Shown in pieces: positions 7,150 through 62,501 of a stretch of 64,000 nt of DNA. This stretch comes from Isurus oxyrinchus (lineage: Eukaryota): contig JANJGN010000052.1 in the NCBI GenBank assembly GCA_026770705.1, positions 1,550,001-1,614,000 on the forward strand, written 5' to 3'. Position 1 is the stretch's first letter, and each line of letters opens with the position of its first letter. The notes beneath the pieces are model-generated. The model saw nothing but the letters and a program-made list of their open reading frames with translations. It did no database searches and was not told the origin of the DNA. Both the position numbers and the translations under genes were made by a program.

Positions 7150-7630
7150 CTTCACAGGATTCCCCCACAAGGGGTAACATCCCCTCAGCATCGACCCTGT
7201 CAAACCCCCCACCACCTCAGAATCTTATATGTTTCAATAAGATCACCTCTCATTCTTCTAAACTCCAATGGATACAGGGCCCAACCTGCTCAACATTTCC
7301 TCATAAGACAAACCCCCTTCATCCCAGGAATCAGCCCAGTGATCCTCCTCTGAGCTGCCTCCAATGCAGAGTCTATCCCTCCCTAAGTAAGGAGACCAGA
7401 ACTGTACACACTGCTCCTGATACAATCTCACCAACGCCCTGTGCAGTTGTAGCAAGACTCCCCTCCTTTTATACTCCATCCCTTTGCAATAAAGGCCAAC
7501 ATTCCACTTGCCTTCCTCATTCCGTGCTGTTCCTGAATGCTGACTTTCTGTGATTCATGTACAAGGACACCCAGATCCCTCTGTACCGCATTCTGCTGCC
7601 TCTCTCCATTGAAGTAATATTCTGCTTTTT
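7150..7630 (-). mobile_element. CR1/HER1-like LINE 3' fragment in the leader-V intron
   Basis: Minus-strand translation MEYKRRGVLLQLHRALVRLYQEQCVQFWSPYL, typical of the CR1 ORF2 C-terminus. Confidence 0.85.
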
Positions 7631-7662
7631 GATGTTCAGTCCCCTCCCTTGTTGCCTTTCAG

Positions 7663-7964
7663 GAGTGACGTCAGAGGGATGGTCTATGAATGCGCTGCCT
7701 CGGAGGGCCATCAGCAGCTCTTGTGTGGTTATTCCGTGTAGCTTTGACTTTCCTTCCCACTCTTACACAGCACTGCACGGAGCTTGGTATAAATATTGGT
7801 ATAGATGGAAATATACCGTCACATACACCAAAGATCCCAATTATGGGGTGGCCACATTCGTGGGACGTGCTAAAATAATCGGCGACTTGGAAGGGAAGAA
7901 TTGTTTGGTGAGGATTGACAGTCTCAGAGCTGAAGACAGTGACGTGTATTGCACCCAATTCTAA
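7663..7964 (+). pseudogene. Truncated Siglec/MAG-like V-set exon
   Basis: Acceptor cctttcag| at 7662; GVTSEGWSMNALPRRAISSSCVVIPCSFDFP...HGAWY...GRAKIIGDLEGKNCLVRIDSLRAEDSDVY, then runs into Gypsy gag sequence at ~7950 with a stop at 7962-7964; no F-strand Arg, G strand or donor. Confidence 0.85.
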
Positions 7965-13237: not shown

Positions 13238-13450
13238 TTGCGTCAATATGAACACATATTTGCACAAGGTGAAGGGCGTTGCGGAGGGACTGATAGTTCT
13301 CGGCGCCAGACAGTCAATGTCCCAGTGACCTTACTGCTGGTCCCAGGCCAGTGGGACAGGGAACATCGACACTGCAATATCCAGAAATGGGTGTGATACC
13401 ACACAGCTACCCACCCGCGGCTGTCCCCTTCAAGTGTTTCAGGTATAAGA
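13238..13450 (+). promoter_or_regulatory. Putative hepcidin proximal promoter: C/EBP-like sites (13238-13247, 13260-13267), GGCGCC BMP-RE plus AGAC SBE (13302-13311), TATA (13444-13450)
   Basis: TTGCGTCAAT, TTGCACAA, GGCGCCAGAC and TATAAGA lie 70-285 bp upstream of the ATG; the same motif classes regulate mammalian HAMP. Confidence 0.65.
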
Positions 13451-13520
13451 GCAGGAAGCTCCTCTAGTTACAAACCAAAGCATCAAAGCAGAGCCAGAAG
13501 ATCAGAAGAGACAGGCAGAG

Positions 13521-13612
13521 ATGGGAAGCTCCCAGATGAAATGGCGACTTGTCTTGTTCACTCTGACTTTGCTGCTCTCCCTGCAGCTGAGTCACTTCTT
13601 CTCCTTGTCGAG
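13521..13612 (+). CDS. HAMP: Hepcidin-like exon 1 (signal peptide MGSSQMKWRLVLFTLTLLLSLQLSHFFS...), apparently one base short of phase 0
   Basis: ATG 77 bp after the TATA start, basic-hydrophobic signal peptide, donor AG|gttaag at 13613; 92 nt where 93 would keep frame with exon 2. Confidence 0.7.
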
Positions 13613-13814
13613 GTTAAGCTAAGAGATGTCCCTCTGGGTGAGGTGTTTCTTGCACATGACTCTACGTCTACCACCCAGATAGACTGGTCTCTTCCGCAGT
13701 TTGATATTATTATGTTCGTGCCTTTAATATTGTCGCCCTCTATGAATTTAACATCATTTCCTTCTGTCGTTTCCCCTGAAATTCTCATTCTTGTTTTCAA
13801 TCCCTCCTCAGCCA

Positions 13815-15780
13815 CTCCCTATCTCTGTAACCTCCACCAGCCCGTACAACCCTCCCTATTTCTGTAAACTCCTCCAGCCCCTACACCCCTCCCTATCTCT
13901 GTAACCTCCACCAGGCCTTACAACCCTCCCTATCTCTGTAACCTCCTCCAGCCTCTACACCCCTCCCTATCTCTGTAACCTCCTCCAGCCCCTACAACCC
14001 GCCCTATCTCTGTAACTTCCTCCAGCCCGTACAACCCTCCCTATCTCTGTAACCTCCTCCAGCCCCTACAACACTCCCTATCTCTGTAACCTCCTCCAGC
14101 CCGTACAACCCTCCCTATCTCTGTAACCTCCTCCAGCCCCTACAACCCTCCCTATCTCTGTAACCTCCTCCAGCCCCTACAACCCTCCCTATCTCTGTAA
14201 CATCCTCCAGCCCCTACAACAATCCCTATCTCTGTAACATCCTACAGTCTCTACAACCCTCCCTATCTCTGTAACCTCCTCCAGTCCCTATAACCCTCCC
14301 TATCTCTGTAACCTCCTCCAGACCCGACAACCCTCCCTATCTATGTAACCTCCTACAGTCCCCACAACACTCCCTATCTCTGTAACCTCCCCCAGGCACC
14401 ACAACCCTCACGATCACTGTAACCTCCTCCAGACCCTACAACCCTCCCTATCTCTGTAACCTGCTCCAGACCCTACAAACCTCCCTATCTCTGTAACCTG
14501 CTCCAGACCCTACAACCCTCCCTATCTCTGTAACCTCCTCCAGCCCCTACAACCCTCCCTATCTCTGTAACATCCTCCAGCCCCTGCAACAATCCCTATC
14601 TCTGTAACATCCTACAGTCTCTACAACCCTCCCTATCTCTGTAACCTCCTCCAGTCCCTATAACCCTCCCTATCTCTGTAACCTCCTCCAGACCCGACAA
14701 CCCTCCCTATCTATGTAACCTCCTACAGTCCCCACAACACTCCCTATCTCTGTAACCTCCCCCAGGCCCCACAACACTCACGATCACTGTAACCTCCTCC
14801 AGACCCTACAACCCTCCCTATCTCTGTAACCTGCTCCAGACCCTACAACCCTCCCTATCTCTGTAACCTGCTCCAGACCCTACAACCCTCCCTATCTCTG
14901 TAACCTGCTCCAGACCCTACAACCCTCCCTATCTCTGTAAAATCCTCCAGGCCCCACAACCCTCACAATCACTGTAACCTCCTCCAGCCCCTACAATCCT
15001 CCTGAACTCTATAACCTCCTCTCCACACTATAACTCTCCCTATCTCTGTAACCTACTGTGGCCCCTACAGCAGTGTCTATTTTGGTAACCTCCTCCAGCC
15101 TCTACAACCCTCCCTACATCTGTAACCTCCTCCAGCCCCCACAACCACCCCATCTCTGTAACCTCCTACAGACCCTACACACCTCCCTACCTCTGTAACC
15201 TCCTCCAGCCCCCACAACTCCCCCATCTCTGTAACCTCCTACAGCCTCTACAACCCTCCCTATCTCTGTAACCTCCTACAGCCCTTACAACCCTCCCTAT
15301 CTCTGTAACCTCCTCCAGCCCCTACAACCCTCCCTATCTCTGTAACCTCCTCCAGCCCCTACACCCCTCCCTATCTCTGTAACCTCCTCCAGCCTCTACA
15401 GTCCTCCCTATCTCTGTAACCTCCTCCAGCCCCTACAACCCTCCCTATCTCTGTAACCTCCTACAGCCTCTACAGCCCTCCCTATTTCTGTAACCTCCTC
15501 CAGCCCCTACAACCCTCCCTATCTCTGTAACCTCCTCCAGCCCCTACACCCCTCCCTATCTCTGTAACCTCCTCCAGCCTCTACAGTCCTCCCTATTTCT
15601 GTAACCTCCTCCAGCCCCTACAACCCTCCCTATCTCTGTAACCTCCTACAGCCTCTACAACCCTCCCTATCTCTGTAACTTCCTACAGCCCTTACAACCC
15701 TCCCTTTCTCTGTAACCTCCTACAGCCTCTACAGCCCTCCCTATCTCTGTAACCTCCTCCAGCCCCCACAACCCTACCTA
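13815..15780. repeat. 37-bp minisatellite (ccctccctatctctgtaacctcctccagcccctacaa), ~50 copies, in hepcidin intron 1
   Basis: Direct tandem copies visible. Confidence 0.97.
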
Positions 15781-15789
15781 AATCACTGG

Positions 15790-16430
15790 TCTGAGTCTCA
15801 CTCCAGGGAATTCAGTCCCATAATGTAGATCAACGCTCCGTGCTGAGGGAGTGCTGCACTCTCAGAGGGTCAGTAGTGTGGAGGTGTTGCACTATTGGAG
15901 GGACAGTACTGAGGGAGTGCTATACTGTCGGAGGTCAGTACTGAGGGAAATCTGCTGTGTCGAAGGGTTAGTACTGAAATAGAGCTGCACTGTCGGAGGG
16001 TCAGTACTGAGGGAGCGCTGCACTGACGGAGGGACAATACTGTGGGAGTGCAGCACTATCGAAGGGTTAGTACTGAGGGAGTGCTGCAGTGTCAAAGGGT
16101 TAGTACTGAGGGAGCACAACAATGTTGAATGAGACATTAAACTGAGTCCCCCGTCTGCCCTCTCGGGCGGGTGTGAAAGATCCCACAGCCACTATTTGGA
16201 GGAAGAGCAGGGGGTGTGCTCCCCGGTGTCCTGGGACCAATATTTATCCCTCAACCAACATCACCAAAAACAGATGATCTAGGCCATGATCACATTGCTA
16301 TTTGTGGGATCTTGCTGTGCACAAATCAGCTGCCACATTTCCTACAGTGTGAGTGCACTTCAAAAACATCCTTCAGTGGCTGTGAAATGCTTTGGGATGT
16401 GGTGAAAGGCGTTAGAGAAATGCAAGTCTG
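15790..16430 (+). mobile_element. DeuSINE/SacSINE1-like SINE with an internally amplified 33-bp unit
   Basis: cagtactgagggagtgctgcactgtcggagggt repeats, then gagacattaaactgag...gaaagatcccacagcc...gaaatgcaagtct tail. Confidence 0.8.
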
Positions 16431-16528
16431 TCCTCCTCCCCCTCTCTCTCCTGTACCTCTCTCTCTCTCTCTCCCTCTCCCTCAATCCTCCTCTCACTTT
16501 CTCCCTGATAAATTCTTTCTTTTTGCAG

Positions 16529-16585
16529 GTTGACACTGCTTTAGGTTCTTCGACGATTGAGAAATCTGTGGATTCCCCGGACACG
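16529..16585 (+). CDS. HAMP: Hepcidin-like exon 2 (propeptide VDTALGSSTIEKSVDSPDT, phase 0-0)
   Basis: Strong acceptor ttctttctttttgcag|, donor ACG|gtaggt; 57 nt; acidic/Ser-rich linker of typical hepcidin exon-2 size. Confidence 0.75.
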
Positions 16586-18124
16586 GTAGGTGGAAATTCA
16601 TTCCTTATTTTAAGGTTTCTCCCTGCTCGTTTCTTCCACAGAAAGTTTTCTGATTTCAAGCTGATTTCAGTGGCAGTCTGTCTCGGTTATACTCAGGAGG
16701 CATGTTTGAAATCGAGCCCCCCCAACTTTTTTGCAAAGCTGGGAAGAGACAATTCCAAGGAAGTGAACATATCCCCACAGGAATTTTAAATGTAACCCAC
16801 GCCGGGAATAGTGAGAGGGAGACTGATCCAGCCTGGGAGTGGGTTAAAGAGAGGCTGGGAGTCGAGAGTCGGAGAGAGGGATGGAATGGGGGAGGGAGGG
16901 ATTGGAAGAGAGAGACAGAGAGTGGGACGGGGAGGGGTGAAAGGGAAAGAACACAGGTGGGAGAGAGTGACAGAGGGAGAAATTAAAGAAGAGATGCAGA
17001 GTGAGGGAAAGTGAAAAGGGAAGAGAGATTGTCCAAGAGAGAGAAATTAACAGGAAAGGGAGAGTTACAGAGTGAGCGAAAGTTACAAAAATAGTGTGAG
17101 AGAGAGGGAGAGATACAGAGTGGGAGAATGAGACAGGGAGAGAGAGGGAGAGAGACAGGAAAAGGGAGAGAGGAGAGAAAGATTGGGAGAGAGGGCAATT
17201 GAGCGGAAGAGTAGGAGAGAGAGAGACAGGGAGAGGAGGAGTGGAAGAGAGGAAGAGAGAGAGAGATATGGAGCAGGAGAACACCTCCTCTGGTCCCGAT
17301 GTTCCTCCAAAATCTCTGAAATTACTGCATCTCCCGGGTCCCCCTGATTCCCATCGCTCCACCATTGGTGGCCGTGCCTTCAGCTGCCTGGGTCCCTGAG
17401 CTCCGGAATACCCTCCCTTAACGTCTCTGCCTCTCTCTCTCTCTCTCTCTCTCTCTCCTTTAAGACACTCCTTAAAAACTGACATCTTTGACCAAGCTTT
17501 TGGTCACCTATCCCTAATATCTCCATATGTGACTCAGTGTTAGACTTCTCTCTGATTTACGCTCCGGTAATGTGGGCTGGGACATTTTGCAATGTCAGAG
17601 GCGCTGTGTAAATGCAAGTTGTGAGTGTTATGTGGAAGGGAGACCCCAGGCGGCAGTCAGTGCCAGAGACTGGAGTCATTGTGTGCAGACCATATCTAAT
17701 CTCTCCGAATGCACAATCGGTTTGACTGTCAGCCAAAGCACTTTTGATATTTGATCCTTCTAACTGTTTATAACCAGGCCTACATCAAACACCGAGAGGC
17801 TGGTGAATCAACAGACACCTTAGAGGATCGAGTGAAAGACAAAGAGGACTTGCATTTCTCTAGCGCCTTCCAACACATCAGGACGTCCCAAAGTGTTTCG
17901 CAGACAATCAAGTGCTTTTTTTCTTTCATGTGAGGTCACTGATGTACTGTGGGAAAAGAATCAGCCATTGGCGCACAGTAAGATCCCACAGACAGCAGCA
18001 TGATAATGACCAGCGCGCTCCCAGTACTTGCACTGCAAGTGTCAGTTCAGGATGTGTGCTCGATTCTCTGCAACTCTCAGCTCTGAGTTAAAAGGACCAC
18101 CAGGCATAATTGAGAAATTACCGA

Positions 18125-18805
18125 GCTGTCGGAGGGTCAGTACCGGCGGGGGGGCAGGACAGTCGGAGGGTCAGTACTGAGGGGGTGCTGCATTGTCAGA
18201 CGGTCAGTCTTGGAGTGCTGCACTGTCAGAGGGTCAGTACCGGCGGGGGACTGCACAGTCGGAGGGTCAGTACTGAGGGGGTGCTGCATTGTCAGACGGC
18301 CAGTACTGAGGGAGTGCTGCACTGTTGGAGGGTCAGTACTGAGGGGGTGCTGCATTGTCAGACGGTCAGTACTGAGGGAGTGCTGCACAGTCGGAGGGTT
18401 AGTACTGAGTGGGTGCTGCACTGTTGAAGGCGCTGTCTTTCAGATGAGACATTAAACTGGGGCAACCAATCTGCCCTCTCAGATGGATGTAGAGGATTCC
18501 ATGGCCACAATTTAAATGAAGTGCGTCAGGAGTTGGGGGGTATGTGTGGAGGGGGTGGTGGGGGGTGGATGGGATGCAGTTATGTCCACTTTCCTGGGGC
18601 AAACATTTATCCCTCAACTGACATTGGTAAAAAACTGAAAATCGGGGCCATTATCACATTTCTGTTTGTGGGATCTTGCTGTGCGTGAATTGCCTGCTGC
18701 GTTTCCTACATTACAGCGGTGAGCTCACTTCAGAAAAAGTCCTTCCTTCAGCTGTGGAACACTTTGGGCCATCCTGAGGAGGGGAAAGGCGCTATAGAAA
18801 TGCGC
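18125..18805 (+). mobile_element. DeuSINE/SacSINE1-like SINE with 33-bp tandem array
   Basis: Same structure as 15790-16430. Confidence 0.8.
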
Positions 18806-18892
18806 CATCCTCCTTCCAATGACGCGCCTGATTGAAATGATGCCTTCTTTCTTTCCGGAATGTTCTCACCTATTGTCCTCCTGCTTTTCCAG

Positions 18893-19009
18893 GGCTCCTT
18901 GCTGCAGCGCCAGAACAGAATGAGCAGACAGCAGCTCTGCAGATTCTGCTGTAACTGCTGTAATTGGAGAGAACCAAATGAGACTTGTGGTCTCTGCTGT
19001 AGATATTAG
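18893..19009 (+). CDS. HAMP: Hepcidin-like exon 3: GSLLQRQNR-MSRQQLCRFCCNCCNWREPNETCGLCCRY*
   Basis: Acceptor ctgcttttccag|; R-x-x-R convertase site; eight Cys in the hepcidin pattern C-x2-CC-x-CC-xn-C-x2-CC; TAG at 19007-19009. Confidence 0.93.
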   Translation, partial: GSLLQRQNRMSRQQLCRFCCNCCNWREPNETCGLCCRY

Positions 19010-19314
19010 ACCCTGGCCTCATTCACGCAAGGTCATCCTGCACCATGCCACAGCCTCTCCCCTCCTTATCTACTGCTTAGCAATCTATTTCACACAGGCC
19101 CTGTTCATTAATTCAAGCTGAAACTTTACCTGCGTTTTACAGCAGGGAAAGAAGCCATTTGGCCCATCTGTTCCATGCTGGAGTTTCTGCTCCACACGAG
19201 TCTCCGCCCACCCCTTCTCCATCTCACCCCATCACCATATCCTTCTATTCATTTCTCCCTCGTGTGTTTATCCAGCTTCCCCTTAAATACATCGACACTA
19301 TTCACCTCACGTGA

Positions 19315-19456
19315 CTGTGTTTGTGTCTGTCTTTATGAGCGTGTGTGTGTGACTGTCAATATGTGTGTGTCAATGTGAATGTGTGTGATTGTGTCAGTGT
19401 GTGTGTGTGTATGTGTGACTGTCAGTGCGTGTCAATGTGAATGTGTGTGATTGTGT

Positions 19457-19502
<46 letters not shown>

Positions 19503-19590
19503 CTGTGTCAGTGTGTGTCAATGTGAATGAGTGAGTGTGTCAGTGTGTCTGTGTGGGTGTGGGTGTGTGAGTGTGCAAGTGAATGTGTGA
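19315..19590. repeat. (TG)n-rich microsatellite
   Basis: Long TG runs. Confidence 0.9.
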
Positions 19591-19786
19591 GGAATCTTAT
19601 GACTAAGTCATTTGAATGGATGTTACTGGGGTTAATGATAGTTAAAATTCAGAGAGATGTAAAGCGGGCTCCTGATTTTGCTGCTTTATGCTCCCGGGCA
19701 CAGATTCACCCCGACAATGTGTTCATGATTCACCATCATCTTGTCGGGACTTTAATTGTAAAGATTATGATTTGTGAAAAAAAATG

Positions 19787-23635: not shown

Positions 23636-24889
23636 TATCAATCAATTAAATTTATTGATTAATCGAATTGAAATTCCTCCAGCTGCCGTGGTGGGATTTG
23701 AACCCGTGCCTTCAAAGCATTCACCTGGGCCTCTGGATCACTGGCCTAGTGCCATTCCCATTGTGCGACTGTCTGCTATCATCATGGCTCTTTCACATCG
23801 ATGTGGAAGTCCTGATAACAGAAGCATTGGACGAGGTACAGAAAGGTGACAGATCAGGAGCTCCATTGCTCAATATGAACGGATAATAAAGATAAATGAA
23901 CATAAACCTTCCAGTCGCTAATTAGGGAGTCACTGTGGAGCCCATGAGTCCCTCGCAGCGCTATTGCAACCTTCTGGATCCCCAGTAGGGGACTCGGGGT
24001 GCAGCTGTGTCTTCCTCATCATTTGGAAAAGCCGGAATTGTTCGGGTGCCCCTTCAAACAGGCCGAAGATGCAGTGGGTGATGTCTCCCACAGGCCCTGG
24101 GAGACCTCCCCTGCCAATTTGTTTTGTAGCTTATTCTTCAACTGCGACATTGGATCAGCTTGAAAAAGGGTGGGGCTGAGGCAATACCACCAGGTAAGCG
24201 TCTATCCCCTCACACGTCACTCCCCCCCACCCCCGTAACCATCACAGTCCCTCCCATCGTGCTGGAGGAGCATAATGTGCACATTCCCCTCCTTCCAATC
24301 AGTCTCCTCCCTTCCTCTCTAATCCTTGATCTTATTGTGTTCGGGGTTGACATCCCAGTCCTCCTCCCTAGACTGTCTGATGTTGACATCCCAATGCCCC
24401 ATGTAGACCTGACCTCTCTCCAACTAGAGGCCCATTGTACTGTGACTTACAGAGACCACCGGCCCCCCTCGATTCCCACCCCCACCCCTACCCTCTATAT
24501 TACCTGCTCCCCACTGATAGGCTGCAGATGCCTCCCCTGACTGGGATTGTGCCACCTGCGGCCTAGTATCAAGCCACCCACCCCCAGGACCGACGTGTGT
24601 GAGGGACTGACCACGTCACTCACACCATGCTGGGCACCACCAACCCAGGACTGCCAGGCTGTCCCCACCACACTGGACTGGGACTAGAATAGGCATGCCA
24701 AGCACAGCTCTCTAAATCGTGGCGCAGACCCACAGCACTCGCAATGTTTTGTGGCCCGAATCCTTGCTGAGGAACTGCCCAGCACTAAAATCAAAACAAC
24801 TGCAGATGCTGGAAATCCAAAACAGAAACAGAAACAGAAATACCTGGAAAAACTCAGCAGGTCTGGCAGCATCGGCGGAGAAGAACTGA

Positions 24890-25203
24890 GGTAGTGCGGC
24901 ACTGTCGGAGGTTCAGTACTGAGGGAGTGCTGCACTGTCGGAGGGTTTGAACTGAGGGAGTGCTGCACTGTCGGAGGGTCTGAACTGAAGGAGTGCTGCA
25001 CTGTCGGAGGGTCTGAACTGAGAGAGTGCTGCACTGTCGGAGGTTCTGAACTGAGGGAGTGCTGCACTGTCGGAGGGTTTGAACTGAGGGAGTGCTGCAC
25101 AGTCGGAGGGTCTGAACTGAGGGAGTGCTGCACTGTCGGAGGGTTTGAACTGAGGGAGTGCTGCATTGTCGGAGGGTCTGATCTGAGGGAGTGCTGCACT
25201 GTC
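24890..25203. repeat. 33-bp SINE-derived minisatellite at the boundary of unit A
   Basis: About 9 copies of ctgagggagtgctgcactgtcggagggtctgaa. Confidence 0.9.
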
Positions 25204-25934
25204 TAAAGAACATTGTACAAATTGCACAAAATTTCATCTGATGCCTGTGTCTCATGCTAACATGAAGTTCATGCACACAACAGGAATATTTCTCGCTGTT
25301 TCTCTGCAGCAAGACAGCTTTGGTATCACACCACCCACTGGCAAGAGTGTGCAGTTACAATGTGACATGTTTACATTGGAAATTTCTATTATAAAGATGG
25401 ACAGAGGAATTCATCTGATTGGAAAACGTGACAACAGGAAGCTATGTCTTTGAGCCAAGTATTTTGCAGCAAAACAAGAATTTTAATCTTTAAATATCTA
25501 CAGAACAGGCTGAGCATTTTAATCACTTGAGTTAATCAAAGTAATTTTATTCATAAGCCAAATGCTTCTTACAATCTATCGCAGCATGAAAAAGGTGCAG
25601 CATTCAGAAAGCACAGTCCAATCAGAGAACAGAGTTTAGCAACGTCACATTTCTGTTCATTCCTATTCGATGAACAATTTCAAAAGGAAATTGGACGGAA
25701 ATTGGAAATAAATTTGCAGGGATACGGGGATAGAGCAGGGGATGGGACTGAGTGGATTGCTTTACAGAGAGACAGCATAGACTCAATGGGCCAAATGTCC
25801 TCCTCCATTGCTGGAATGACTCGATGATACGGAGATGATTATAACCAGGACACTGACCAGTTTCATTACAAATTAACACAACATCACACGTTATTTGTCC
25901 GCACTGACTGACCAGATTGTTGCTGTACAAAGCT

Positions 25935-26074: not shown

Positions 26075-27669
26075 CTAGAGAACACACAGAAAGAAATCGT
26101 CACTGACTCTCCGCTTTCAATCTCTCACTCTGGCTGAACAATCAAACTTCATATCACTGCAACATTTGCTGTAATATTAACCCATCCACTGGGATTCAAT
26201 GTGGAATGAATGTTTTCATTGTAAACACTCTAAGAGTGGACAATCGGAACTTTCCCCTTAGCGTGGAACATTGGTGAGAATGGATCATTGTGCTGTTGGA
26301 CTCCCTGTCCAATGTTTCTCTCTATTGCTGTGTACAGGATTGTGCTGTAGAAAATTCTGGAAACGTTTAGTGCCGGGTGAAAATCCATCTCGGACGTGTG
26401 TGCGAATCGGGCAGGATCGAGATGGACTCCCCCACGGACTTACACCCCCCGCTTAATAAACAGTTCCAATCTTTACCCAGAGAGAGGGGAGAATGTGGAA
26501 CTCGCTCCCACAGGGAATGGTTGAGGTGAATAGTAGGAAATTAGGAAGTGAAATTGCTTGAAAAGCTTGGAGATGCAAGGGTTAAGTGTGACCGTGCCAC
26601 CACTGGTGGGAGAGTGTAACTACAGCGTGACGTTTACATAGGCAATCCCCATTATGAACAAGGACATTGGACATCATGTGAAAAATGGGCACTGGAAAGC
26701 TGAGAACTTGATGTAAGCTTTTCACCAACAGGAATTCCCTTCCTAAACCTCTCCACTTTCCTCTTACTCTCAAATACTCAAACAAAATTTCACACAAAAT
26801 CACGTAAGGAGGAATTGGGACAGGTGACTGGTCAAAGAGTTAGATTTCAGGAAGGTTCTTAAAGGAGGATAGAGAGTTGGAGAGGCAGAGAGTGTCTGTG
26901 AGTAACTCTGTGCATCTGAGTGTCTGTAATAGACTTTGCAATTTCCATATTCTTCCATAAATATGAAAGGGAACACAAATCCCAGAATCCAGGTCAACTC
27001 TCCGGTGCAGCACTGAGGGAGGTCAGGTAATCCACAGGGGAGTATGTGCTAGTGTGTTTGTTTGTGAGTGTGTCTTTGTGTGTGCTCATAGATGTGAGAT
27101 TGTGTGTCTGCAGGTGTCGATATAAGGCTGTATATTTATGTGTGTTGTTGTAGTGTTTCAATCTGAGAGAGATGTTGAAGTTTGTCTTAACTAACGTTCC
27201 ACAGTGATGGTTATGAACCCCTCCACTGCTCCATGTTCATTCACTGAGCACACTGATAGTCTCCAGTGTCCCTGGATGTAACGTGAGGAATCACCAACCA
27301 CAGCTCATTGTTGGAACTTGTTCTGTTCATTTAATATTCAGATGTCAGGACCGGACTCAACAAGACAGATTGCAGGTTTACCAACAGAAAGTGAACAACA
27401 ATTTATATTCAAAGGGAAGAGAGTGCTGGTTAATCAGCAAGTGGTCACTGATTGGAGGAGGTGTTGCCATGGAAAATAATGTGTGTGAGATGTAAAGTTT
27501 AGACAGCTTGTCTCTTCATTCAGCAACAATCAAATAAAGATCAGTTATCTTCTATCGACTGTGAAGCACTTTGAGAGGCATGAGAATGTGGACACTGAGA
27601 ACGGGCTGCACTGTCAGAGGGTCAGCGCTGAGGGAGTGCTGATGTAGAATGAAGGGTGTCCGTACTTAC

Positions 27670-27966
27670 CTTGCACAGTTAGTACGAGGGTCCGCTCCGA
27701 TGAAACAGATGGATATCTCACTCTGCAGCTGAGAGTGTGTCTGTGGTGTTTGAGTGATGGAATCAGGGTCAGAACAGAAGTATAGGTCAGAGTGACATCA
27801 TGCTGAGTTACAGTGTTTGAGACTGATCCAGGTACGTCAGTGGGAGTGTCCCAGGTTAAGACAGGTGCTGCTGTTCCATTGCACGTTGTGTTGAAGGTGC
27901 AGCTTACATCCACACGCTTTCCTGCAATAATTTCAGCAGGGAATATTGTGGATTTATCTGTGAAAT
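27670..27966 (-). CDS. Siglec-like gene A, C2-set Ig exon
   Basis: DFTDKSTIFPAEIIAGKRVDVSCTFNTTCNGTAAPVLTW...TLSCRVRYP...LTVQ; 297 nt, phase 1-1, gtaagt donor; extra Cys typical of Siglec domain 2. Confidence 0.92.
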
Positions 27967-28694
27967 CTAACAGACAGAGAATGGATCCTTTTAGAGAAAT
28001 ATAACGTGAAGCATCAGTTCAAATAGAAATCACAGTCCCACAAGAAAAAGCACTTTTACAAGGATGATATCAGATCTAACAGATTACAATGATCAGGAGA
28101 GAATTTCCTGCTTTGAGACTTTGGTATTTCTGTCTCTCAGCTTAATACACGTTCACTCCGAGACACTTGAACTGATAATAGTGGGTGAGGGTGAAGGAGC
28201 AGACCAGAGTTTGGAGTGCACTACCCCATCATTCACTCAGCAATCTGGGCCATTTATTACTTTGCAATTTGTGGGAGCTTGCTGTGCACAAATTGGCTGC
28301 TGTGTTTCTCACATTACAACAGTAACTACAATTCAGGAATCAGCTCATTGGCTGTGAAGTGATTTCGTCCGTGGTGAGGTGGTGAAAGGTGCTACAGAAA
28401 TGTGAATCTTTCTTCTGTCGATATGTCAGACTTCAAGACAGGATTAGAGAGATCGATGGGAGTGGATAACCTGATAACATTGATGGACACAGTCAATACA
28501 TTTAATCATTGTCATTAAAGTGAGTATTAGAGGTTGCTTTAGGACTGAACTGGAAGCTATCAACAGGTTATTGAGAATCAGACAGTGTGTTATAATAAGC
28601 TGTGTTTTGTGTTAATATGTAAACGTCACAGATTGTGTTATTTCCCATTGAGTGTTGGATGTGAATTGATGAGTAATTATAACACAGCACTTAC

Positions 28695-29063
28695 CAGAAA
28701 CGTGAAGCTGGGTTACAGGGTAATAGTTATGGCTCAGACCATTGTCAAATTCTATTCTGAAAAAATAAGGTCCTGCATCTTCCCGTCTGATGTTGTTTAT
28801 AATCAGGGAACAGTCGCCATGTTTCAGGTCTCCAGACAGCCGGGTCCGATTGTGGAAACGTGGTAACTCATGACTGTGATCCTTGGAGTGAAAGGCAATG
28901 GGAGCCCAGGGAATCTGTTCCTCATTATTAAACCAGACTCCACCTCGCGGTTGGTTTTCCAGACACGATGGATAACTGTAATGACATGGAATCTGTACAC
29001 ACGAACCTTCCTGCGCTGTCACCTCTCATGGAGTGTCACCTTTCCACTCTTGTGACAGTCCAA
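28695..29063 (-). pseudogene. Siglec V-set pseudo-exon V2A (in-frame TGA at 29026-29028)
   Basis: Intact splice sites; VGLSQEWKGDTP*EVTAQEGSCVQIPC...YFFRIEF; CGA in V2B. Confidence 0.88.
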
Positions 29064-32270: not shown

Positions 32271-32541
32271 TACACGGACAGTGTGAGGGGTGGAAGGTGT
32301 AGTGGGGAGGAGATACTTCACTCAGGGGGGAGGTGTCATCACCCCTCAGCTCGGTTTATGTTACAGCTATGATGTGGATTCAATCACACACAATAAGCTC
32401 ATGGATCTGGGAGCAGAAATAGACAAATCATTAAAAATAGTGACGCTGGTTAACATGGCCAAAAAACAAGCAAATCAAACACTATTATTTCCCATTGAGT
32501 GTTGGATGTGAATTGTTGAGTAATTATAACACAGCACTTAC

Positions 32542-32916
32542 CAGAAACGTGAAGCTGGGTTTCAGGACGGTTGTTGTATCTATTCCTGTTGTCAAATTCT
32601 AGGCTGAATAAATAATATCCTGCATCTTCCCGTCTGATGTTGTTTATAATCAGGGAACAGTCGCCATCTTTCAGGTCTCCAGACAGCCGGGTCCGATGGT
32701 GGAACTGTGGTAACTCGCGATTATGATCCTTGGAGTGAAAGGCTATAGACCGTTCATTCCATTTTTCCCAATTCCTTCTCATATACCAGATTCCGACTGG
32801 TGATCTCGCTACTAAATATGATGGATAACTGTAATTACATGGAATCTGTACACACGAACCTTCGTGCGCTGTCACCTCTCCTGGAGTGTCACCTTTCCAC
32901 ACTTGTGATAGTCCAA
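32542..32916 (-). CDS. Siglec-like gene A, V-set exon V1A (open; F-strand Arg replaced by Ser)
   Basis: 375 nt, phase 1-1; EGSCVQIPCNYSYP...GDLKDGDCSLIINNIRREDAGYYLFSLEF; Siglec Cys pattern with no canonical F-strand Cys. Confidence 0.92.
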
Positions 32917-33319
32917 CTAGGGAGAGAAATATCAATATTTAACTCTGAATGTTTTCTCAATCCACTAGACTCAATATCCACCCCCTCCATCACTGGGGCA
33001 CACAGGCTACAGTCTGGATAATCCACAGGTCACACAATGAATGCCCCAAGGTTTCACAACAGATTGAAGAGAATTCCGGACACAGGAGTGGACAAGTTCA
33101 TTCTAAATTGGCTCATGACCCTCAGGTACCTATTTAGTGAAGTCAGTCTGCCACCCAACACAGTGTCTACAAGACACACTAATTGAAGTGAGTTCACTGC
33201 TGATTTACAACGTAGGACAATGGATTAGGAGCCTTCAGAATTCCCCCATTATCACCATCATGAATCATGAATTGGCCTAGCTGTCCTAGATCCTCAGTGT
33301 CTAAGGCAGTGGTTCCTAT

Positions 33320-42309: not shown

Positions 42310-44468
42310 CTAGAGAACACACAGAAAGAAATCATCACTGACTCTCCGCTTTCAATCTCTCACTCTGGCTGAACAATCAAGCTTCATATCACTGCAACAT
42401 TTGCTGTAATATTGACCCATCCACTGGGATTCAATGTGGAATGAATGTTTTCATTGTAAACACTCTAAGAGTGGACAATCGGAACTTTCCCCTTAGCGTG
42501 GAACATTGGTGAGAATGGATCATTGTGCTGTTGGACTCCCTGTCCAATGTTTCTCTCCATCGCTGTGTACAGGATTGTGCTGTAGAAAATTCTGGAAACG
42601 TTTTGTGAAGGATGGAAATCCATCTCGGACGCGTGTGCGAATCGGGCAGGATCGAGATGGACTCCCCCACGGACTTACACCCCCCGCTTAATAAACAGTT
42701 CCAATCTTTACCCAGAGAGAGGGGAGAATGTGGAACTCGCTCCCTCTGGGAGTGGTTGAGGTGAACAGTATCGATGTATTTACGGGGCAGGAGGGTCAGT
42801 AACCAGAGGGACACAGATTGACGAACTGGAGGGGGAGATGAGGAGAATTTGTTTTGACAGAGCGAGTTGTTGTGATCTGGAAGGTTCTGCCTGAAAGGGC
42901 GGTGGAAGCAGATTCAATAGGAACTTTCGAAAGGGAAATTGGATAAACACTTGAAGGAGGAAGATGGGGGCAAAGTGGAGTGGTGGTTAGTGGATCTGAT
43001 TGGATAGAACATTGAAAGACCTGGCACAGGCACAATGGGCTGAATGGCCTCCTCCTGTGCTGTATCATTCTCCGCTTCCATGATCTCTCCCCCAGTCAGT
43101 AACCACTCCAGATCCCTCTTGAAGGCAACAGAGAGACAGCAACCACCACACCCACTGACAGCACATTCCCGAGGATCACTACTCTCTGGGAAAAGATGAA
43201 CTCCCCAACATCCAGCCTATTCCTGCTTCCCAGAGAGTGTAAACCCTTCAGGGAGGCACTGAGGAAGTTTTCAATAAAATGACATCAAATCTACCGTTTG
43301 AGAAATAATTTAATTCCGATGAACTCACAGCTTGTGAGGCAAACTGGGAAGTGGATTTGCTTGAAAAGCTGAGAGATGCAAGGGTTAAGTTCTACTGTGC
43401 ACCACTGGTGGTACAGTGTAACTACAGCGTGACGTTTACATAGGCAATCCCTATTATAAACAAGGACATTGGACATCAGGTGAAATACGGGCAGTGGAAA
43501 AGTGAGAATATGATGTAAGCTTTTCACCAACAGGAATTCCCTTCCTAAACCTCTCCACCTCTCTCTTACTCTCAGATACTCAAACAAAATTTCACACAGA
43601 TTCACGTAAGGAGGAGTTGGGACAATTGACTGGTCAAAGGGTTAGGTTTCAGGAAGCTTCTTAAAGGAGGATAGAGAGTTGGAGAGACAGAGAGTATCTG
43701 TGAGTGTCTCTATGCATCTGAGTGTCTGTAATAGACTTTGCAATTTCCATATTCTTCCATAAACATGAAAGGGAACAGAAATCTCAGAATCCAGGTCAAC
43801 TCTCCGGTGCAGCACTGAGGGAGGTCAGGTAACCCACTGGGGAGTATTGTGCTAGTGTGTTTGTTTGTGTCTTTGTGTGTGCTCATATACGAGGGATTGT
43901 GTATCTGCAGGTGTCTATTTAGGTCTGTATATTTGTGTGTGTTTGTGTCATGTTTCAATCTGAGACAGATGATGAAATCTGTGTACACTCACATTCCACA
44001 GTGATGGTTATGAACCCCTCCACTGCTCCATGTTCATTCTCTGCCACACACTGATAGTCTCCAGTGTCCCTGGATTTAACGTGAGGAATCACCAACCACA
44101 GCTCATTGTTGGAACTTGTTCTGTTCATTGTGATATTCAGATGTCAGGGCAGGACTCAGCAAGACAGATCGCATGTTTACCAACAGAAAGTGAACAACAA
44201 TTTATATTTAAAGGGAAGAGAGTGCTGATTGGTTGGCAAGTGGTCTCTGATAGGTGGAGGTGTTGCCATGGAAAATAATGTGTGTGAGATTTAAAGTTTA
44301 AACAGCTTGTCTCTTCATTCAGGAACAATCAAATAAAGATCAATTAACTTCTATCGACTGTGAAGCTAATTGAGAGGCATGAGAATGTGGATACTGAGAA
44401 CGGGCTGCACTGTCAGAGGGTCAGCGCTGAGGGAGTGCTGATGTAGAATGAAGGATATCTCAACTTAC

Positions 44469-44764
44469 CTTGCACAGTTAGTACGAGGGTCTGCTCCGAT
44501 GAAACAGATGGATATCTCACTCGGCAGCTGAGAGTGTGTCCGTGGTGTTTGAGTGATGAGATCAGGGTCAGAACAGAAGTATAGGTCAGAGTGACACCAT
44601 GCTGAGTTACAGTGTTTGAGACTGATCCAGGTACGTCAGTGGGAGTGTCCCAGGTTAAGACAGGTGCTGCTGTTCCATTGCACGTTGTGTTGAAGGTGCA
44701 GCTTACATCCACACGCTTTCCTGCAATAATTTCACAGGGAATATCGTGGGTTTATCTGTGAATT
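44469..44764 (-). pseudogene. Siglec-like gene B, C2-set exon with a 1-nt deletion
   Basis: 296 nt versus 297 in A (ttca-cagg versus ttcagcagg, ~44734); spliced frame reads EFTDKPTIFPVKLLQESVWM*. Confidence 0.85.
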
Positions 44765-45491
44765 CTAACAGACAGAGAATGGATCCTTTTAGAGAAATAT
44801 AACGTGAAGCATTAGTTCAAAGAGAAATCACAGTCCCACAAGAGAAAGCACTTTTACAAGGATGATATCAGAACTGAGAGGTGACAACGATCAGGAGAGA
44901 ATTTCCTGCTTTAAGACTTTGGTGTTTCTGTCTCTCAGCTTAATACACGTTCACTCCGAGACACTTGAACTGATAATAGTGGGTGAGGGTGGAGGAGCAG
45001 ACCAGAGTTTGGAGTGCACTACCCCATCAGTCCCTCAGCGATCTGGGCCATTTATTACTTTGCAATTTGTGGGAGATTGCTGTGCGCAAATTGGCTGCTG
45101 TGTTTCTCACATTACAACAGTAACTACAATTCAGGAATCAGCTCATTGGCTGTGAAGTGACTTGGTACATATTGAGGTGGTGAAAGGCTCCATAGAAATG
45201 TGAATCTTTCTTTTGTCGATATGTCAGACTTTGAGACAGGATTAGAGAGATCGAGGCGAGTGGATAACCTGATAACATTGATGGACACAGTCAATACATT
45301 TAATCATTGATATTAAACAAGTATTAGAGGTTGCTTTAGGACTGAACTGGAAGCTATCACCAGGTTATTGAGAATCAGACAGTGTGTTATAATAAGCTGT
45401 GTTTTGTGTTAATATGTAAACGTCACAGTTTGCGTTATTTCCTCTTGAGTGTTGAATGTGAATTGTTGAGTAATTATAACACAGCACTTAC

Positions 45492-45857
45492 CAGAAATGT
45501 GAAGCTGGGTTGCAGGATAGTAGCTGTAACTATTACTGTTGTCAAATTCTATTCTGAAAAAATAAGGTCCTGCATCTTCCCGTCAGATGTTGTTTATAAT
45601 CAGGGAACAGTCACCATCTTTCAGGTCTCCAGACAGCCGGGTCCAATGGTGGAACCGTGGTAACTCGTGACTGTGATCCTTGGAGTGAAAGGCTATAGAC
45701 AATGTTCTCCGTTCCTCATTATTAAACCAGACTCCACCTCGTGGTTGGTTTTCCAGACACGATGGATAACTGTAATGACATGGAATCTGTACACACGAAC
45801 CTTCCTGCGCTGTCACCTCTCGTGGAGTGTCACCTTTCCACTCTTGTGAGGGTTCAG
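45492..45857 (-). pseudogene. Siglec V-set pseudo-exon V2B (in-frame TGA at 45583-45585)
   Basis: ...DCSLIINNI*REDAGPYFFRIEFDNSNSYSYYPATQLHIS; AGA in the other three V exons. Confidence 0.88.
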
Positions 45858-48800: not shown

Positions 48801-49147
48801 GGGGACGGATTCGGGAGATGGAAACACGTTCAAGGACTTTGGAGGGGAAAGAGAGGCTGGAGATGGGACGGGGGTTTACACGGACAGTGTGAGGGGTGGA
48901 AGGTGTAGTGGGGAGGAGACACTTCACTCAGGGGGGATGTGTCATCACCCCTCAGCTCGGTTTATGTTACAGCTATGATGTGGATTCAATCACACACAAT
49001 AAGCTCATGGATCTGGGAGCAGAAATAGACAAATCATTAAAAATAGTGACGCTGGTTAACACGGCCAAAAAACAAGCAAATCAAACACTATTATTTCCCA
49101 TTGAGTGTTGGATGTGAATTGTTGAGTAATTTTCACACAGCACTTAC

Positions 49148-49525
49148 CAGAAACCTGAAGCTGGGTTTCAGGGTAATAGTTATGGCTCGGACCATTGTCA
49201 AATTCTATTCTGAAAAAATAAGGTCCTTCATCTTCCCGTCTGATGTTGTTTATAATCAGGGAACAGTCGCCATCTTTCAGGTCTCCAGACAGCCGTGTCC
49301 GATGGTGGAACCGTGGTAACTCGTGACTGTGATCCTTGGAGTGAAAGGCTATAGACCATTTAGACCATTTGTTCTGTATGTACCTCCTCATATACCAGAT
49401 TCCGACATGTGTTTTCTTTACCAAATGTGATGAGTAACTGTAATGACATGGAATCTGTACACATGAACCTTCCTGCGCTGTCACCTCTCGGGGACTGTCA
49501 CCTTTCCACTCTTGTGACAGTCCAA
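49148..49525 (-). CDS. Siglec-like gene B, V-set exon V1B (open; retains YFFR Arg)
   Basis: 378 nt, phase 1-1, canonical splice sites. Confidence 0.88.
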
Positions 49526-49739
49526 CTGGGGAGAGAAATATCAATATTAAACTCTGGATGGTTTGTAGATCCACTAGACTCGATATCCACCCCCTCCATC
49601 ACTGGGGCACAGTGGCTGCAGTTTGGACCATCTACAGGACACACAAGGAACTCCACAAGGTATCACAATGGATGGAAGAGAATCCTGGACACAGGAGTGG
49701 ACAAGGTCATTCTACATTGGCTGATGGTCCTCAGGACCC

Positions 49740-61316: not shown

Positions 61317-61411
61317 CTGTAATAGAAACAGAAATGATCAGAGTGACAATCAGAGTGATCAGTGTTTAGTATTATTGATCCAAATCGAAAATTCCATCCA
61401 CAATAGATACA

Positions 61412-62368
61412 TTAATTATTGATACTGAACAGGGTTTGATTATTGATACTGAACGGGGTTTGATTATTGATACTGAACGGAGTTTGATTATTGATACTGA
61501 ACGGGGTTTGATTATTGATTCTGAATGGGGTTTGATTATTGATTCTGAACGGGGTTTGATTATTGATACTGAACGGGGTTTGATTATTGATACTGAATGG
61601 GGTTTGTTTATTGATACTGATCGGGGTTTGATTTTTGATACTGATCGGGGTTTGATTATTGATACTGAATGGGGTTTGATTATTGATACTGAATGGGGTT
61701 TGATTATTGATTCTGAACGGGGTTTGATTATTGATACTGAATGGGGTTTGTTCATTGATACTGATCGGGGTTTGATTTTTGATACTGATCGGGGTTTGAT
61801 TATTGATACTGAACGGGGTTTGATTATTGATATTGAACGGGGTTTGATTATTGATACTGAACGGGGTTTGATTATTGATTCTGAACGGGGTTTGATTATT
61901 GATACTGAACGGGGTTTGATTATTGATTCTGAATGGAGTTTGATTATTGATACTGAACGGGGTTTGATTATTGATACTGATCGGGGTTTGATTATTGATA
62001 CTGAACGGGGTTTGATTATTGATACTGAACGGGGTTTGATTATTGATTCTGAACGGGGTTTGATTATTGATACTGAACGGGGTTTGATTATTGATTCTGA
62101 ATGGAGTTTGATTATTGATACTGAACGGGGTTTGATTATTGATACTGATCGGGGTTTGATTATTGATACTGAACGGGGTTTGATTATTGATACTGATCGG
62201 GGTTTGATTATTGATACTGAACGGGGTTTGATTATTGATACTGAACGGGGTTTGATTATTGATTCTGAACGGGGTTTGATTATTGATTCTGAACGGGGTG
62301 TGATTATTGATTCTGAACGGGGTTTGATTATTGATACTGAACGGGGTTTGATTATTGATTCTGAACGG
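61412..62368. repeat. 24-bp minisatellite (tgattattgatactgaacggggtt), ~40 copies, intronic
   Basis: Head-to-tail copies without unique spacers. Confidence 0.97.
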
Positions 62369-62501
62369 TGTTGGGTGTGAGTTTGGTTGGGTTTGGCAGT
62401 GACTGTATAAAACATTGCAGATACAGGACTGGAGCAGCCATATCAATAACCAGGCTACTGGAGCAGCTGAGAGGCTGGGGATCCTGTGGTGTGTGACTCA
62501 C

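What the first reader, a model, noticed from the sequence alone, without database searches (positions are those of the whole stretch)
18920..19006. Atypical mature hepcidin: no N-terminal His, doubled loop and an N-glycosylation sequon
Seen: predicted 29-mer MSRQQLCRFCCNCCNWREPNETCGLCCRY. It has six residues before Cys1, as in human DTHFPI, but no His or Phe. The Cys5-Cys6 loop has 8 residues (NWREPNET) versus 4 in human and contains N-E-T. The cleavage site is a minimal R-x-x-R. Established: the DTHFP/QSHL N-terminus is needed for ferroportin regulation and is absent from antimicrobial teleost HAMP2 peptides. Inference: a distinct hepcidin type, possibly antimicrobial or co-evolved with a divergent ferroportin, and possibly glycosylated.
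Basis: partly seen in the sequence, partly recalled or inferred. Interest (0 to 1): 0.8.

Follow-up and report, generated by a model that had tools for sequence, protein, structure and literature searches.

The report
Long-loop shark hepcidin, flawed gene copy
This is the last exon of one copy of an unusual long-looped hepcidin gene in a shark-like genome. The peptide type is real and strongly transcribed, but this copy has a faulty first splice site and the same RNA sample also holds a normal-looking hepcidin, so it is probably a defence-type side branch rather than the iron hormone.

Summary
Window 18920-19006 encodes the 29-mer exactly as written: eight Cys, an 8-residue Cys5-Cys6 loop with N-E-T, no His or Phe before Cys1, and RQNR upstream. 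The exon passes Pfam's Hepcidin cut-off (32.5 bits against 27).

Spliced RNA contigs in one public run place three exons at 13521-13613, 16529-16585 and 18893-19009.

It would give a 26-mer starting QQLC.
- In this copy the RNA-supported first intron would begin TT. The only GT, one base upstream, gives a stop at codon 36. The abundant RNA therefore probably comes from sister copies.
- One contig in the same run branches after ...RMS into HLSICMYCCG, a His-containing standard N-terminus. The long-loop form is therefore not the only hepcidin.
- The sequon is weak evidence. Shuffling gives one in 16% of trials, and sea bass Hamp2 also carries N-M-S in its loop.

No orthologue could be fetched, and no function was tested.

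This scan had already noted many sister copies elsewhere in the same genome.

My reading is a shark parallel to teleost Hamp2, seen here in a probably silent duplicate.

The parts
13444..13449 (+). TATA-like box (TATAAG) about 75 bases before the first ATG
   Evidence: Pattern scan and sequence. Its function was not tested.
13521..13613 (+). Exon 1 coding part: MGSSQMKWRLVLFTLTLLLSLQLSHFFSLSR, which looks like a signal peptide (basic start, 12-residue hydrophobic core)
   Evidence: Sequence and translation. X1 contigs lie here at very high word depth. Joints leave at 13612/13613 in 9 contigs, plus 6 loose ends that continue with exon 2 letters.
13613..13620 (+). Faulty first donor. The window reads G|GTTAAGC. 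The RNA-supported in-frame junction needs the intron to start at 13614, which is TT. The only GT (13613-13614) shifts the frame by one base.
   Evidence: joint 13612->16528: ends GT..CA, 'both' 1, so equally 13613->16529 with TT..AG; the canonical GT gives a first stop at codon 36 of 88, while the RNA-like join gives 88 open codons with 8 Cys.
16529..16585 (+). Exon 2: VDTALGSSTIEKSVDSPDT (propeptide), phase 0 to phase 0, with acceptor ...TTTTTGCAG and donor GTAGGT
   Evidence: Sequence and translation. Joints: 13612/3->16528/9, and 16584->18892 (cut +1, GT..AG) in 9 contigs. The X1 depth bin 16456-16646 reads 145717.
17778..17831 (+). Minor optional in-frame exon (AYIKHREAGESTDTLEDR), not the main exon 2
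   Evidence: Found by splice-site scan. Only 1 X1 contig joins 16584->17777 (depth 844), and the X1 bins here read about 1000-1400, against 1e5 or more on the exons.
18893..19009 (+). Exon 3 coding part: end of the propeptide, convertase sites, eight-Cys peptide and TAG
   Evidence: Pfam Hepcidin 32.5 bits. Acceptor used by 9+1 X1 contigs.
18908..18928 (+). RQNRMSR: two overlapping minimal RxxR convertase motifs (RQNR 18908-18919, RMSR 18917-18928)
   Evidence: Translation. The cleavage itself is inferred, not shown.
18920..19006 (+). The alternative 26-mer starts at 18929.
18962..18985 (+). Cys5-Cys6 loop NWREPNET (8 residues), with the N-E-T sequon at 18977-18985
   Evidence: gaps. (a 4-column gap against both the bass and the human hepcidin chains).
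19010..19100 (+). Start of the 3' untranslated region. Its end was not determined.
   Evidence: The X1 depth bin 18939-19100 reads 630888. No AATAAA or ATTAAA was found in 19007-19600.

Best explanation
The stretch is the last exon of one copy of a multi-copy, long-loop branch of the hepcidin (HAMP) family. The gene lies among Siglec/CD22-like receptor exons. It has the usual three-exon plan: signal peptide, short acidic propeptide, then a convertase site and an eight-Cys peptide. Inferred mechanism: the precursor enters the secretory pathway, forms four disulfides and is cut by a furin-type convertase. The cut falls after RQNR (29-mer, in register with the standard-type sister MSHLSIC...) and/or after RMSR (26-mer, QQLC...). 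Either product lacks His3 and the hydrophobic residue at position 4, so I expect it not to act on ferroportin. I expect it to serve another role, most likely host defence, as teleost Hamp2 does beside Hamp1. The four extra residues should lengthen the tip of the hairpin, away from the N-terminus. This particular copy has a damaged first-intron donor. It is therefore probably a silent or nonsense-producing duplicate, and the abundant RNA comes from sister copies with the same exon 3. Shown here: family membership, exon structure, spliced abundant RNA, the donor fault in the assembly, and a His-containing sister transcript fragment. Inferred: the cleavage site, the fold, the lack of ferroportin activity, a defence role, and the silence of this copy.
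For: Family: Pfam Hepcidin 32.5 bits against a cut-off of 27; Cys spacing 2,0,1,0,8,2,0; the only two PDB hits at E<=10 are hepcidins (1s6w bass E 0.24, 1m4f human E 9.1).
Gene and RNA: in run X1, joints 13612->16528 (9 contigs), 16584->18892 with GT..AG (9 contigs, plus 1 with a T variant) and six loose ends at 13613 that continue with exon 2 letters. Depth bins on the exons read 1.2e5-6.3e5, against about 700-1400 in most non-repeat intron bins.
Exon 3 matches the RNA: none of the 40 'other letter' rows shown and none of the 12 indel rows lies in an exon. 55 rows were not shown.
Donor fault: the canonical GT at 13613 gives a stop at codon 36. The RNA-like join gives 88 open codons. None of the 15 joints shown uses 13612->16529.
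Sister diversity in the RNA: the deepest exon2-exon3 contig (13927.5) carries T at 16584, where the window has C. Another contig carries G at 16530.
Standard-type sister: the X1 loose end after 18925 reads, in frame, HLSICMYCCG. Compare sea bass Hamp1 QSHLSLCRWCC (passage, PMC5665920).
Hamp2 parallel: the core CRFCCNCC..PN..CG.CCR is shared with the bass hepcidin chain 1s6w and with sea bass Hamp2. The title of PMC5665920 says that Hamp1 but not Hamp2 regulates ferroportin, and a passage reports that injected Hamp1 lowered fpn1 expression.
Context: V-set/Ig_CD22 exons at 49056-49571 and 32450-32932 and a C2-set exon at 27614-27910.
Against: No function was tested.
The formal charge is only +2 (29-mer) or +1 (26-mer), which is modest for a membrane-active peptide.
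The standard-type sister rests on one contig and 30 shown letters.
Contigs cannot be assigned to one copy. Some intron contigs match this copy with 0 differences (records 1 and 3), so this copy may be transcribed.
The donor fault could be an assembly error or a true rare TT splice. 410 joints and 55 variant rows were not shown.
No orthologue or sister protein could be fetched: two blank searches, one chance hit and a blank Atlas search. Conservation of the loop and sequon across species is therefore untested here.
The single-sequence AlphaFold model gave helices at pLDDT 68, not a hairpin.
The tissue and condition of run X1 are unknown, and its RNA label is a guess by the tool. The GT..AG joints are what show spliced RNA.
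Confidence: 0.6

Rival explanations
1. This copy is productive. Either the assembly has a one-base error at the exon 1 donor, or the intron really is cut at TT..AG, and the 88-residue precursor is made from this locus.
For: All X1 junction contigs shown keep the frame (9+1 contigs, 6 loose ends). Exons 1-3 are otherwise intact, with 8 Cys and no stop. Two intron contigs match this copy without any difference (records 1 and 3). A scan note on another copy reports the same TT geometry (untested lead).
Against: TT donors are almost unknown among spliceosomal introns (general knowledge). A usable GT lies one base upstream and would be chosen instead, giving a stop at codon 36. The RNA run holds several sister variants (T at 16584, G at 16530), so the in-frame junctions need not come from here.
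Confidence: 0.3
2. The mature peptide is the 26-mer QQLC... cut after RMSR, not the reader's 29-mer. Its N-terminal Gln may cyclise.
For: RMSR (18917-18928) is as good a minimal RxxR as RQNR. It exists only because Arg replaces the His seen in the sister fragment.
Against: In register with the sister fragment MSHLSIC and with the six residues before Cys1 in sea bass Hamp1 and Hamp2, the family's site is the upstream one. Neither site has the basic P2 residue that furin prefers (recalled).
Confidence: 0.35
3. The long-loop peptide is an iron hormone after all, matched to a divergent or second ferroportin of cartilaginous fish.
For: A review passage says that some cartilaginous fish have a second ferroportin with another residue at the C326 position (PMC8235187). 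The transcript is very abundant. A GGCGCC element lies at 13302 in the promoter; it is like the BMP-responsive core of the human HAMP promoter (recalled), but about 0.06 such sites are expected by chance on my own estimate.
Against: A His-containing standard N-terminus is transcribed in the same sample. The long-loop peptide has Arg, Gln and Gln where the standard forms have His and hydrophobic residues. No ferroportin was examined here.
Confidence: 0.07
4. The loop Asn (N-E-T) is N-glycosylated in vivo.
For: A canonical N-x-T with no Pro lies in a loop that is probably exposed.
Against: A sequon appears by chance in 3208 of 20000 shuffles of the non-Cys residues, and in the loop in 1645 of 20000. 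Sea bass Hamp2 and the bass hepcidin chain have N-M-S at the aligned place, and natural bass hepcidin was reported with an unglycosylated mass (recalled, not checked). The Asn lies 10 residues from the C-terminus and next to a disulfide Cys, a poor position for co-translational glycosylation (recalled).
Confidence: 0.15
5. The atypical features are decay: the whole long-loop form is a pseudogene product.
For: This copy has a broken donor.
Against: Eight Cys and an open frame are kept. Exon 3 and its 3' flank carry the deepest RNA contigs of the stretch, and no variant row shown lies in an exon.
Confidence: 0.05

Closest known systems
Teleost type-2 hepcidin (sea bass Hamp2; bass hepcidin, PDB 1s6w)
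   Same: The eight-Cys frame. An identical core CRFCCNCC, and a shared P-N in the loop and CG.CCR at the end. No QSHL/His3-type N-terminus. A sequon at the aligned loop position (N-M-S against N-E-T). It coexists with a His-containing type-1 form. It is the best PDB match (E 0.24).
   Different: The loop has 8 residues against 5. The N-terminal residues differ (MSRQQL against HSSPGG). Orthology is unlikely, since type 2 is regarded as a duplication within bony fish (recalled), so the likeness is probably ancestral core plus parallel change. Antimicrobial activity is shown for the teleost peptide and not for this one.
Iron-regulatory hepcidin (human hepcidin-25, PDB 1m4f; sea bass Hamp1)
   Same: Pfam family, Cys frame, six residues before Cys1, three-exon gene, and a convertase site before the peptide.
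   Different: Position 3 is Arg, not His. Positions 4-5 are Gln-Gln, not Phe-Pro or Leu-Ser. The loop has 8 residues against 4 (human) or 5 (Hamp1). The convertase site is minimal.
His-containing sister transcript in the same RNA run
   Same: It matches the stretch up to 18925 (...RQNRMS) at the 90% likeness threshold used; how far upstream that contig reaches was not shown.
   Different: It then continues HLSICMYCCG. Only 30 letters were seen, in 1 contig; its loop and its locus are unknown to me.
Nurse shark plasma hepcidin
   Same: A hepcidin was detected among nurse shark plasma proteins and had no whale shark orthologue in that analysis (one passage of PMC9207270).
   Different: The passage gives no sequence, and supplements are closed, so I cannot say whether it is the long-loop or the standard type.

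Membership tests
Hepcidin family (Pfam PF06446) | Profile score above the curated cut-off | tested here: met
   32.5 bits against 27, E 1e-7, profile positions 24-52 of 53.
Hepcidin family (Pfam PF06446) | Eight Cys in the frame C-x2-CC-x-CC-loop-C-x2-CC | tested here: met
   Gaps 2,0,1,0,8,2,0. The loop is longer than in the two solved chains.
Hepcidin family (Pfam PF06446) | Three-exon gene: signal peptide, propeptide, then convertase site plus peptide in the last exon | tested here: met
   Exons are set by RNA joints and translated. In this copy, however, the exon 1 donor is faulty.
Hepcidin family (Pfam PF06446) | Beta-hairpin fold held by four disulfides | tested here: inconclusive
   The single-sequence AlphaFold2 model had pLDDT 68 and pTM 0.35 and predicted two helices. 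It was too weak to use, and no fold search was run.
Hepcidin family (Pfam PF06446) | Position beside MAG/CD22-type Siglec genes, as for mammalian HAMP (recalled) | tested here: met
   V-set and Ig_CD22 hits above cut-off on exons at 49056-49571 and 32450-32932, a C2-set hit at 27614-27910, and a weak V-set hit at 7557-7961. The mammalian arrangement itself is recalled and was not checked.
Iron-regulatory (type 1) hepcidin | His at position 3 and a hydrophobic or aromatic residue at position 4 of the mature peptide | tested here: not met
   M-S-R-Q-Q-L before Cys1. Sea bass Hamp1 has Q-S-H-L-S-L.
Iron-regulatory (type 1) hepcidin | Binds ferroportin and causes its loss or occlusion | not testable with these tools
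   This needs a peptide and a cell assay.
Teleost type-2 (defence) hepcidin | Descent from the bony-fish hamp2 duplication | not tested
   No relatives could be fetched for a tree. I treat the likeness as functional analogy only.
Teleost type-2 (defence) hepcidin | Direct antimicrobial activity and induction by infection rather than by iron | not testable with these tools
   The tissue and condition of run X1 are unknown.

The most novel reading that the evidence does not exclude
Cartilaginous fish independently evolved an expanded, very highly expressed family of long-loop hepcidins. This family is not a mere defence peptide but a second hormone arm: the enlarged and possibly glycosylated hairpin tip and the Arg-for-His N-terminus are matched to the second ferroportin, lacking the C326-type Cys, that a review reports in some cartilaginous fish (PMC8235187). 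These animals would then have two hepcidin-ferroportin pairs.
Probability: 0.06. Interest if true: 0.8.

Novelty: new variant of a known kind. Interest (0 to 1): 0.4.

Why it matters
Hepcidin is the master iron hormone. It is agreed that bony fish split it into an iron form and a defence form. A long-loop form without His3, abundantly transcribed beside a standard-looking form in a cartilaginous fish, would show one of two things: either this split arose twice, or it is older than thought. It would also give a natural test of how much of the scaffold (loop length, N-terminus) can change. In 7 full-text searches on sharks and hepcidin I found no paper that describes a shark hepcidin peptide. 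One plasma proteome merely lists hepcidin. Supplements, which may hold sequences, were closed. For this particular locus the practical message is more modest: it is probably a non-productive duplicate, and annotation pipelines should not count it as a working gene without checking the donor.

Tried and rejected
Exon 2 by splice-site scan. My best-looking candidate, 17778-17831, is not the main exon 2. RNA joints put exon 2 at 16529-16585, and only 1 contig uses 17777.

Relatives by protein search.
- phmmer of the 38-residue exon against 1.84 billion representatives gave 1 hit (P0001, E 3.5e-4). Its sequence is a repetitive 1442-residue protein with no hepcidin Cys frame, and I rejected it as chance.
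- The search for homologous proteins was blank with the 49-residue ORF.
- It was blank again with the 57-residue open frame 18836-19006, region 18-57, which widened the length filter to about 31-99 residues. Even teleost hepcidins that share CRFCCNCC did not appear, so that collection seems not to hold this family. The blanks say nothing about novelty.
- The protein Atlas gave a best score of 0.77, below the useful range.

Reads from other organisms. I chose X5, X9 and X11 hoping for RNA of related species. They cover only the repeats in the introns and read 0 in the bins 13400-13590, 16456-16646 and 18939-19100.

Structure. The single-sequence AlphaFold2 model was low in confidence and helical, so I ran no fold search.

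In-frame rescue. ATG 13541 in another frame plus the canonical GT gives 81 open codons, but MATCLVHSDFAALPAAESLLLLVE is no signal peptide. I rejected it as a route to a secreted peptide.

Joined model.

Full report
WHAT IS THERE. Window 18893-19009 on the + strand follows a pyrimidine tract and an AG. It reads GSLLQRQNRMSRQQLCRFCCNCCNWREPNETCGLCCRY and then TAG. Its Cys residues are at 7, 10, 11, 13, 14, 23, 26 and 27, so the Cys5-Cys6 loop is NWREPNET (8 residues) with N-E-T. The six residues before Cys1 hold no His or Phe. The 38 residues pass Pfam's Hepcidin model at 32.5 bits against a cut-off of 27. A loose eight-Cys pattern occurs once in six frames of the 64 kb and never in 200 shuffles. 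Against solved structures, the only two matches at E<=10 are hepcidins: bass hepcidin 1s6w (E 0.24) and human hepcidin 1m4f (E 9.1). Both need a four-column gap in this loop.

One detail was missed. RQNRMSR holds two overlapping minimal RxxR motifs, so a 26-mer beginning QQLC is an alternative product.

THE GENE. I looked for exons upstream. Exon 1 (ATG at 13521, after a TATAAG at 13444) encodes MGSSQMKWRLVLFTLTLLLSLQLSHFFSLSR, which looks like a signal peptide. My splice-site scan suggested 17778-17831 as exon 2, but the RNA evidence says otherwise.

Of the 19 runs listed for 13400-19100, I laid four (X1, X5, X9, X11) at 90% likeness. Only X1 covers the exons. Its depth bins read 225560 (13400-13590), 145717 (16456-16646), 121133 (18748-18938) and 630888 (18939-19100). 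Most non-repeat intron bins read about 700-1400. X5, X9 and X11 read 0 in three of those four bins (21.4, 444.8 and 2.2 in the bin 18748-18938) and cover only intron repeats.

X1 shows these joints:
- 13612->16528: 9 contigs.
- 16584->18892, GT..AG with the cut one place right: 9 contigs, plus 1 deeper contig that carries a T variant.
- 16584->17777: 1 contig.

The main exon 2 is therefore 16529-16585 (VDTALGSSTIEKSVDSPDT), and 17778-17831 is a minor optional exon. The tool only guesses that X1 is RNA; the GT..AG joints are what show spliced transcripts. Contig depth cannot rank expression, so I say only that very deep spliced contigs lie on all three exons.

THE FAULT IN THIS COPY. The exon 1 to exon 2 joint is reported with ends GT..CA and one ambiguous letter. 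It is equally 13613->16529, with ends TT..AG. Six further contigs stop matching at 13613 and continue with exon 2's first letters. The RNA therefore has one G more than a GT-AG splice of this window can give.

Arithmetic shows the consequences:
- Cutting at the only GT (13613) gives a stop at codon 36.
- The RNA-like join gives 88 open codons with 8 Cys.
- A start at 13541 with the canonical GT gives 81 open codons, but without a signal peptide.

None of the 15 joints shown is the canonical 13612->16529; 410 joints were not shown. The same run holds sister variants: T for C at 16584 in the deepest exon2-exon3 contig, and G for T at 16530. The simplest reading is that the in-frame RNA comes from sister copies, and that this copy has lost its donor. 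The loss could be a G-to-T change at the first intron base or the loss of one G; I cannot tell which. Scan notes on other copies of the genome say the same of some of them. Those are leads, not support. An assembly error or a rare TT splice remains possible (my estimate 0.3).

IS IT THE ONLY HEPCIDIN? No. One X1 contig matches the window up to 18925 (...RQNRMS) and then continues with 30 shown letters that read, in frame, HLSICMYCCG. That gives M-S-H-L-S-I-C, with His at position 3 and six residues before Cys1. It is in register with sea bass Hamp1 QSHLSLC, as printed in a passage of PMC5665920.

This does two things. It also shows that a standard-type N-terminus is transcribed beside the long-loop type. 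It rests on one contig.

WHAT IT MOST RESEMBLES. By eye, the core CRFCCNCC, the loop P-N and the end CG.CCR are shared with bass hepcidin and sea bass Hamp2 (HSSPGGCRFCCNCCPNMSGCGVCCRF). Hamp2 lacks the His3-type start, and its loop carries N-M-S. The title of PMC5665920 says that Hamp1, not Hamp2, regulates ferroportin (listing), and a passage reports that injected Hamp1 lowered fpn1 expression. I therefore read the shark long-loop form as a functional parallel of Hamp2. I do not claim orthology, because no tree could be built.

Formal charge is +2 for the 29-mer and +1 for the 26-mer. That is low, but similar to Hamp2.

The importance of the N-terminus for ferroportin binding is taken from general knowledge of the field. 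The review passages I read (PMC8235187) mention minihepcidins, the co-evolution of ferroportin C326, and a second ferroportin in some cartilaginous fish. They do not cover the residue-level requirement.

THE SEQUON. N-E-T is real, but it is not telling. Shuffling the non-Cys residues gives some sequon in 3208 of 20000 trials and one in the loop in 1645 of 20000. The aligned Hamp2 loop has a sequon too. From recall, natural bass hepcidin had an unglycosylated mass, and sequons a few residues from the C-terminus are inefficiently used. I put glycosylation at 0.15.

CONTEXT. Exons with V-set and Ig_CD22 hits above cut-off lie at 32450-32932 and 49056-49571 (- strand). A C2-set exon lies at 27614-27910, and a weak V-set exon at 7557-7961 (+ strand). 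From recall, mammalian HAMP lies next to MAG and CD22, so the neighbourhood fits a true HAMP locus that has been amplified together with Siglec genes.

WHAT COULD NOT BE DONE.
- No orthologue or sister protein could be fetched.
- The structure model was uninformative.
- Seven full-text searches on sharks and hepcidin found no description of a shark hepcidin peptide. I read single passages only of PMC9207270 (nurse shark plasma lists hepcidin), PMC6795676, PMC3832898 (a reference-list mention) and PMC7067429. Supplements were closed and may hold sequences.

VERDICT. This is a real member of the hepcidin family, of an undescribed long-loop variant without His3, and its exon sequence is abundantly transcribed. 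It is most likely a defence-type side branch beside a standard hepcidin. This particular copy is probably a silent duplicate because of its first donor.

The scan had already noted many sister copies elsewhere in this genome. I score on what I tested: novelty 'new variant of a known kind', interest 0.4.

Noticed in passing
window 13800-15300 (intron 1): A long tandem array of about 37-base units (...ccctccctatctctgtaacctcctccagcccctacaa...). Contigs of all four runs laid, from four differently coded organisms, match it at 90-99%.
   Followed up: no
window 18110-18430 (intron 2), also 15700-16100 and 24684-25312: Arrays of about 33-base units (ggtcagtactgagggagtgctgcactgtcggagg-like). They reach word depths of up to 5e5-7e5 in runs X5, X9 and X11, which do not cover the hepcidin exons, so this is a widespread, transcribed or very abundant repeat family.
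   Followed up: no
window 13302-13307: GGCGCC lies 142 bases before the TATA-like box. It is the same hexamer as the BMP-responsive core of the human HAMP promoter (recalled). I estimate about 0.06 such sites by chance in the 420 bases scanned, so the hint is weak.
   Followed up: partly
window 17778-17831: A 54-base in-frame optional exon (AYIKHREAGESTDTLEDR) is joined to exon 2 in one X1 contig. It would lengthen the propeptide by 18 residues.
   Followed up: partly
window 16530 and 16584 (exon 2): The RNA contigs carry sister-copy or allelic variants: G for T at 16530 (Val to Gly) and T for C at 16584 (Thr to Met). The latter is in the deepest exon2-exon3 contig.
   Followed up: partly
window 27614-29022, 32450-32935, 44413-45876, 49056-49574 (- strand); 7557-7964 (+ strand): Repeated units of Siglec/CD22-like V-set and C2-set exons flank the hepcidin gene on both sides, and two units are near-identical in their translations.
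   Followed up: partly
window 61372-62446: A long tandem repeat gives ORFs of 314-347 residues in three frames (the SIIKPRS... type). It is probably a minisatellite and not a gene.
   Followed up: no
   Followed up: no
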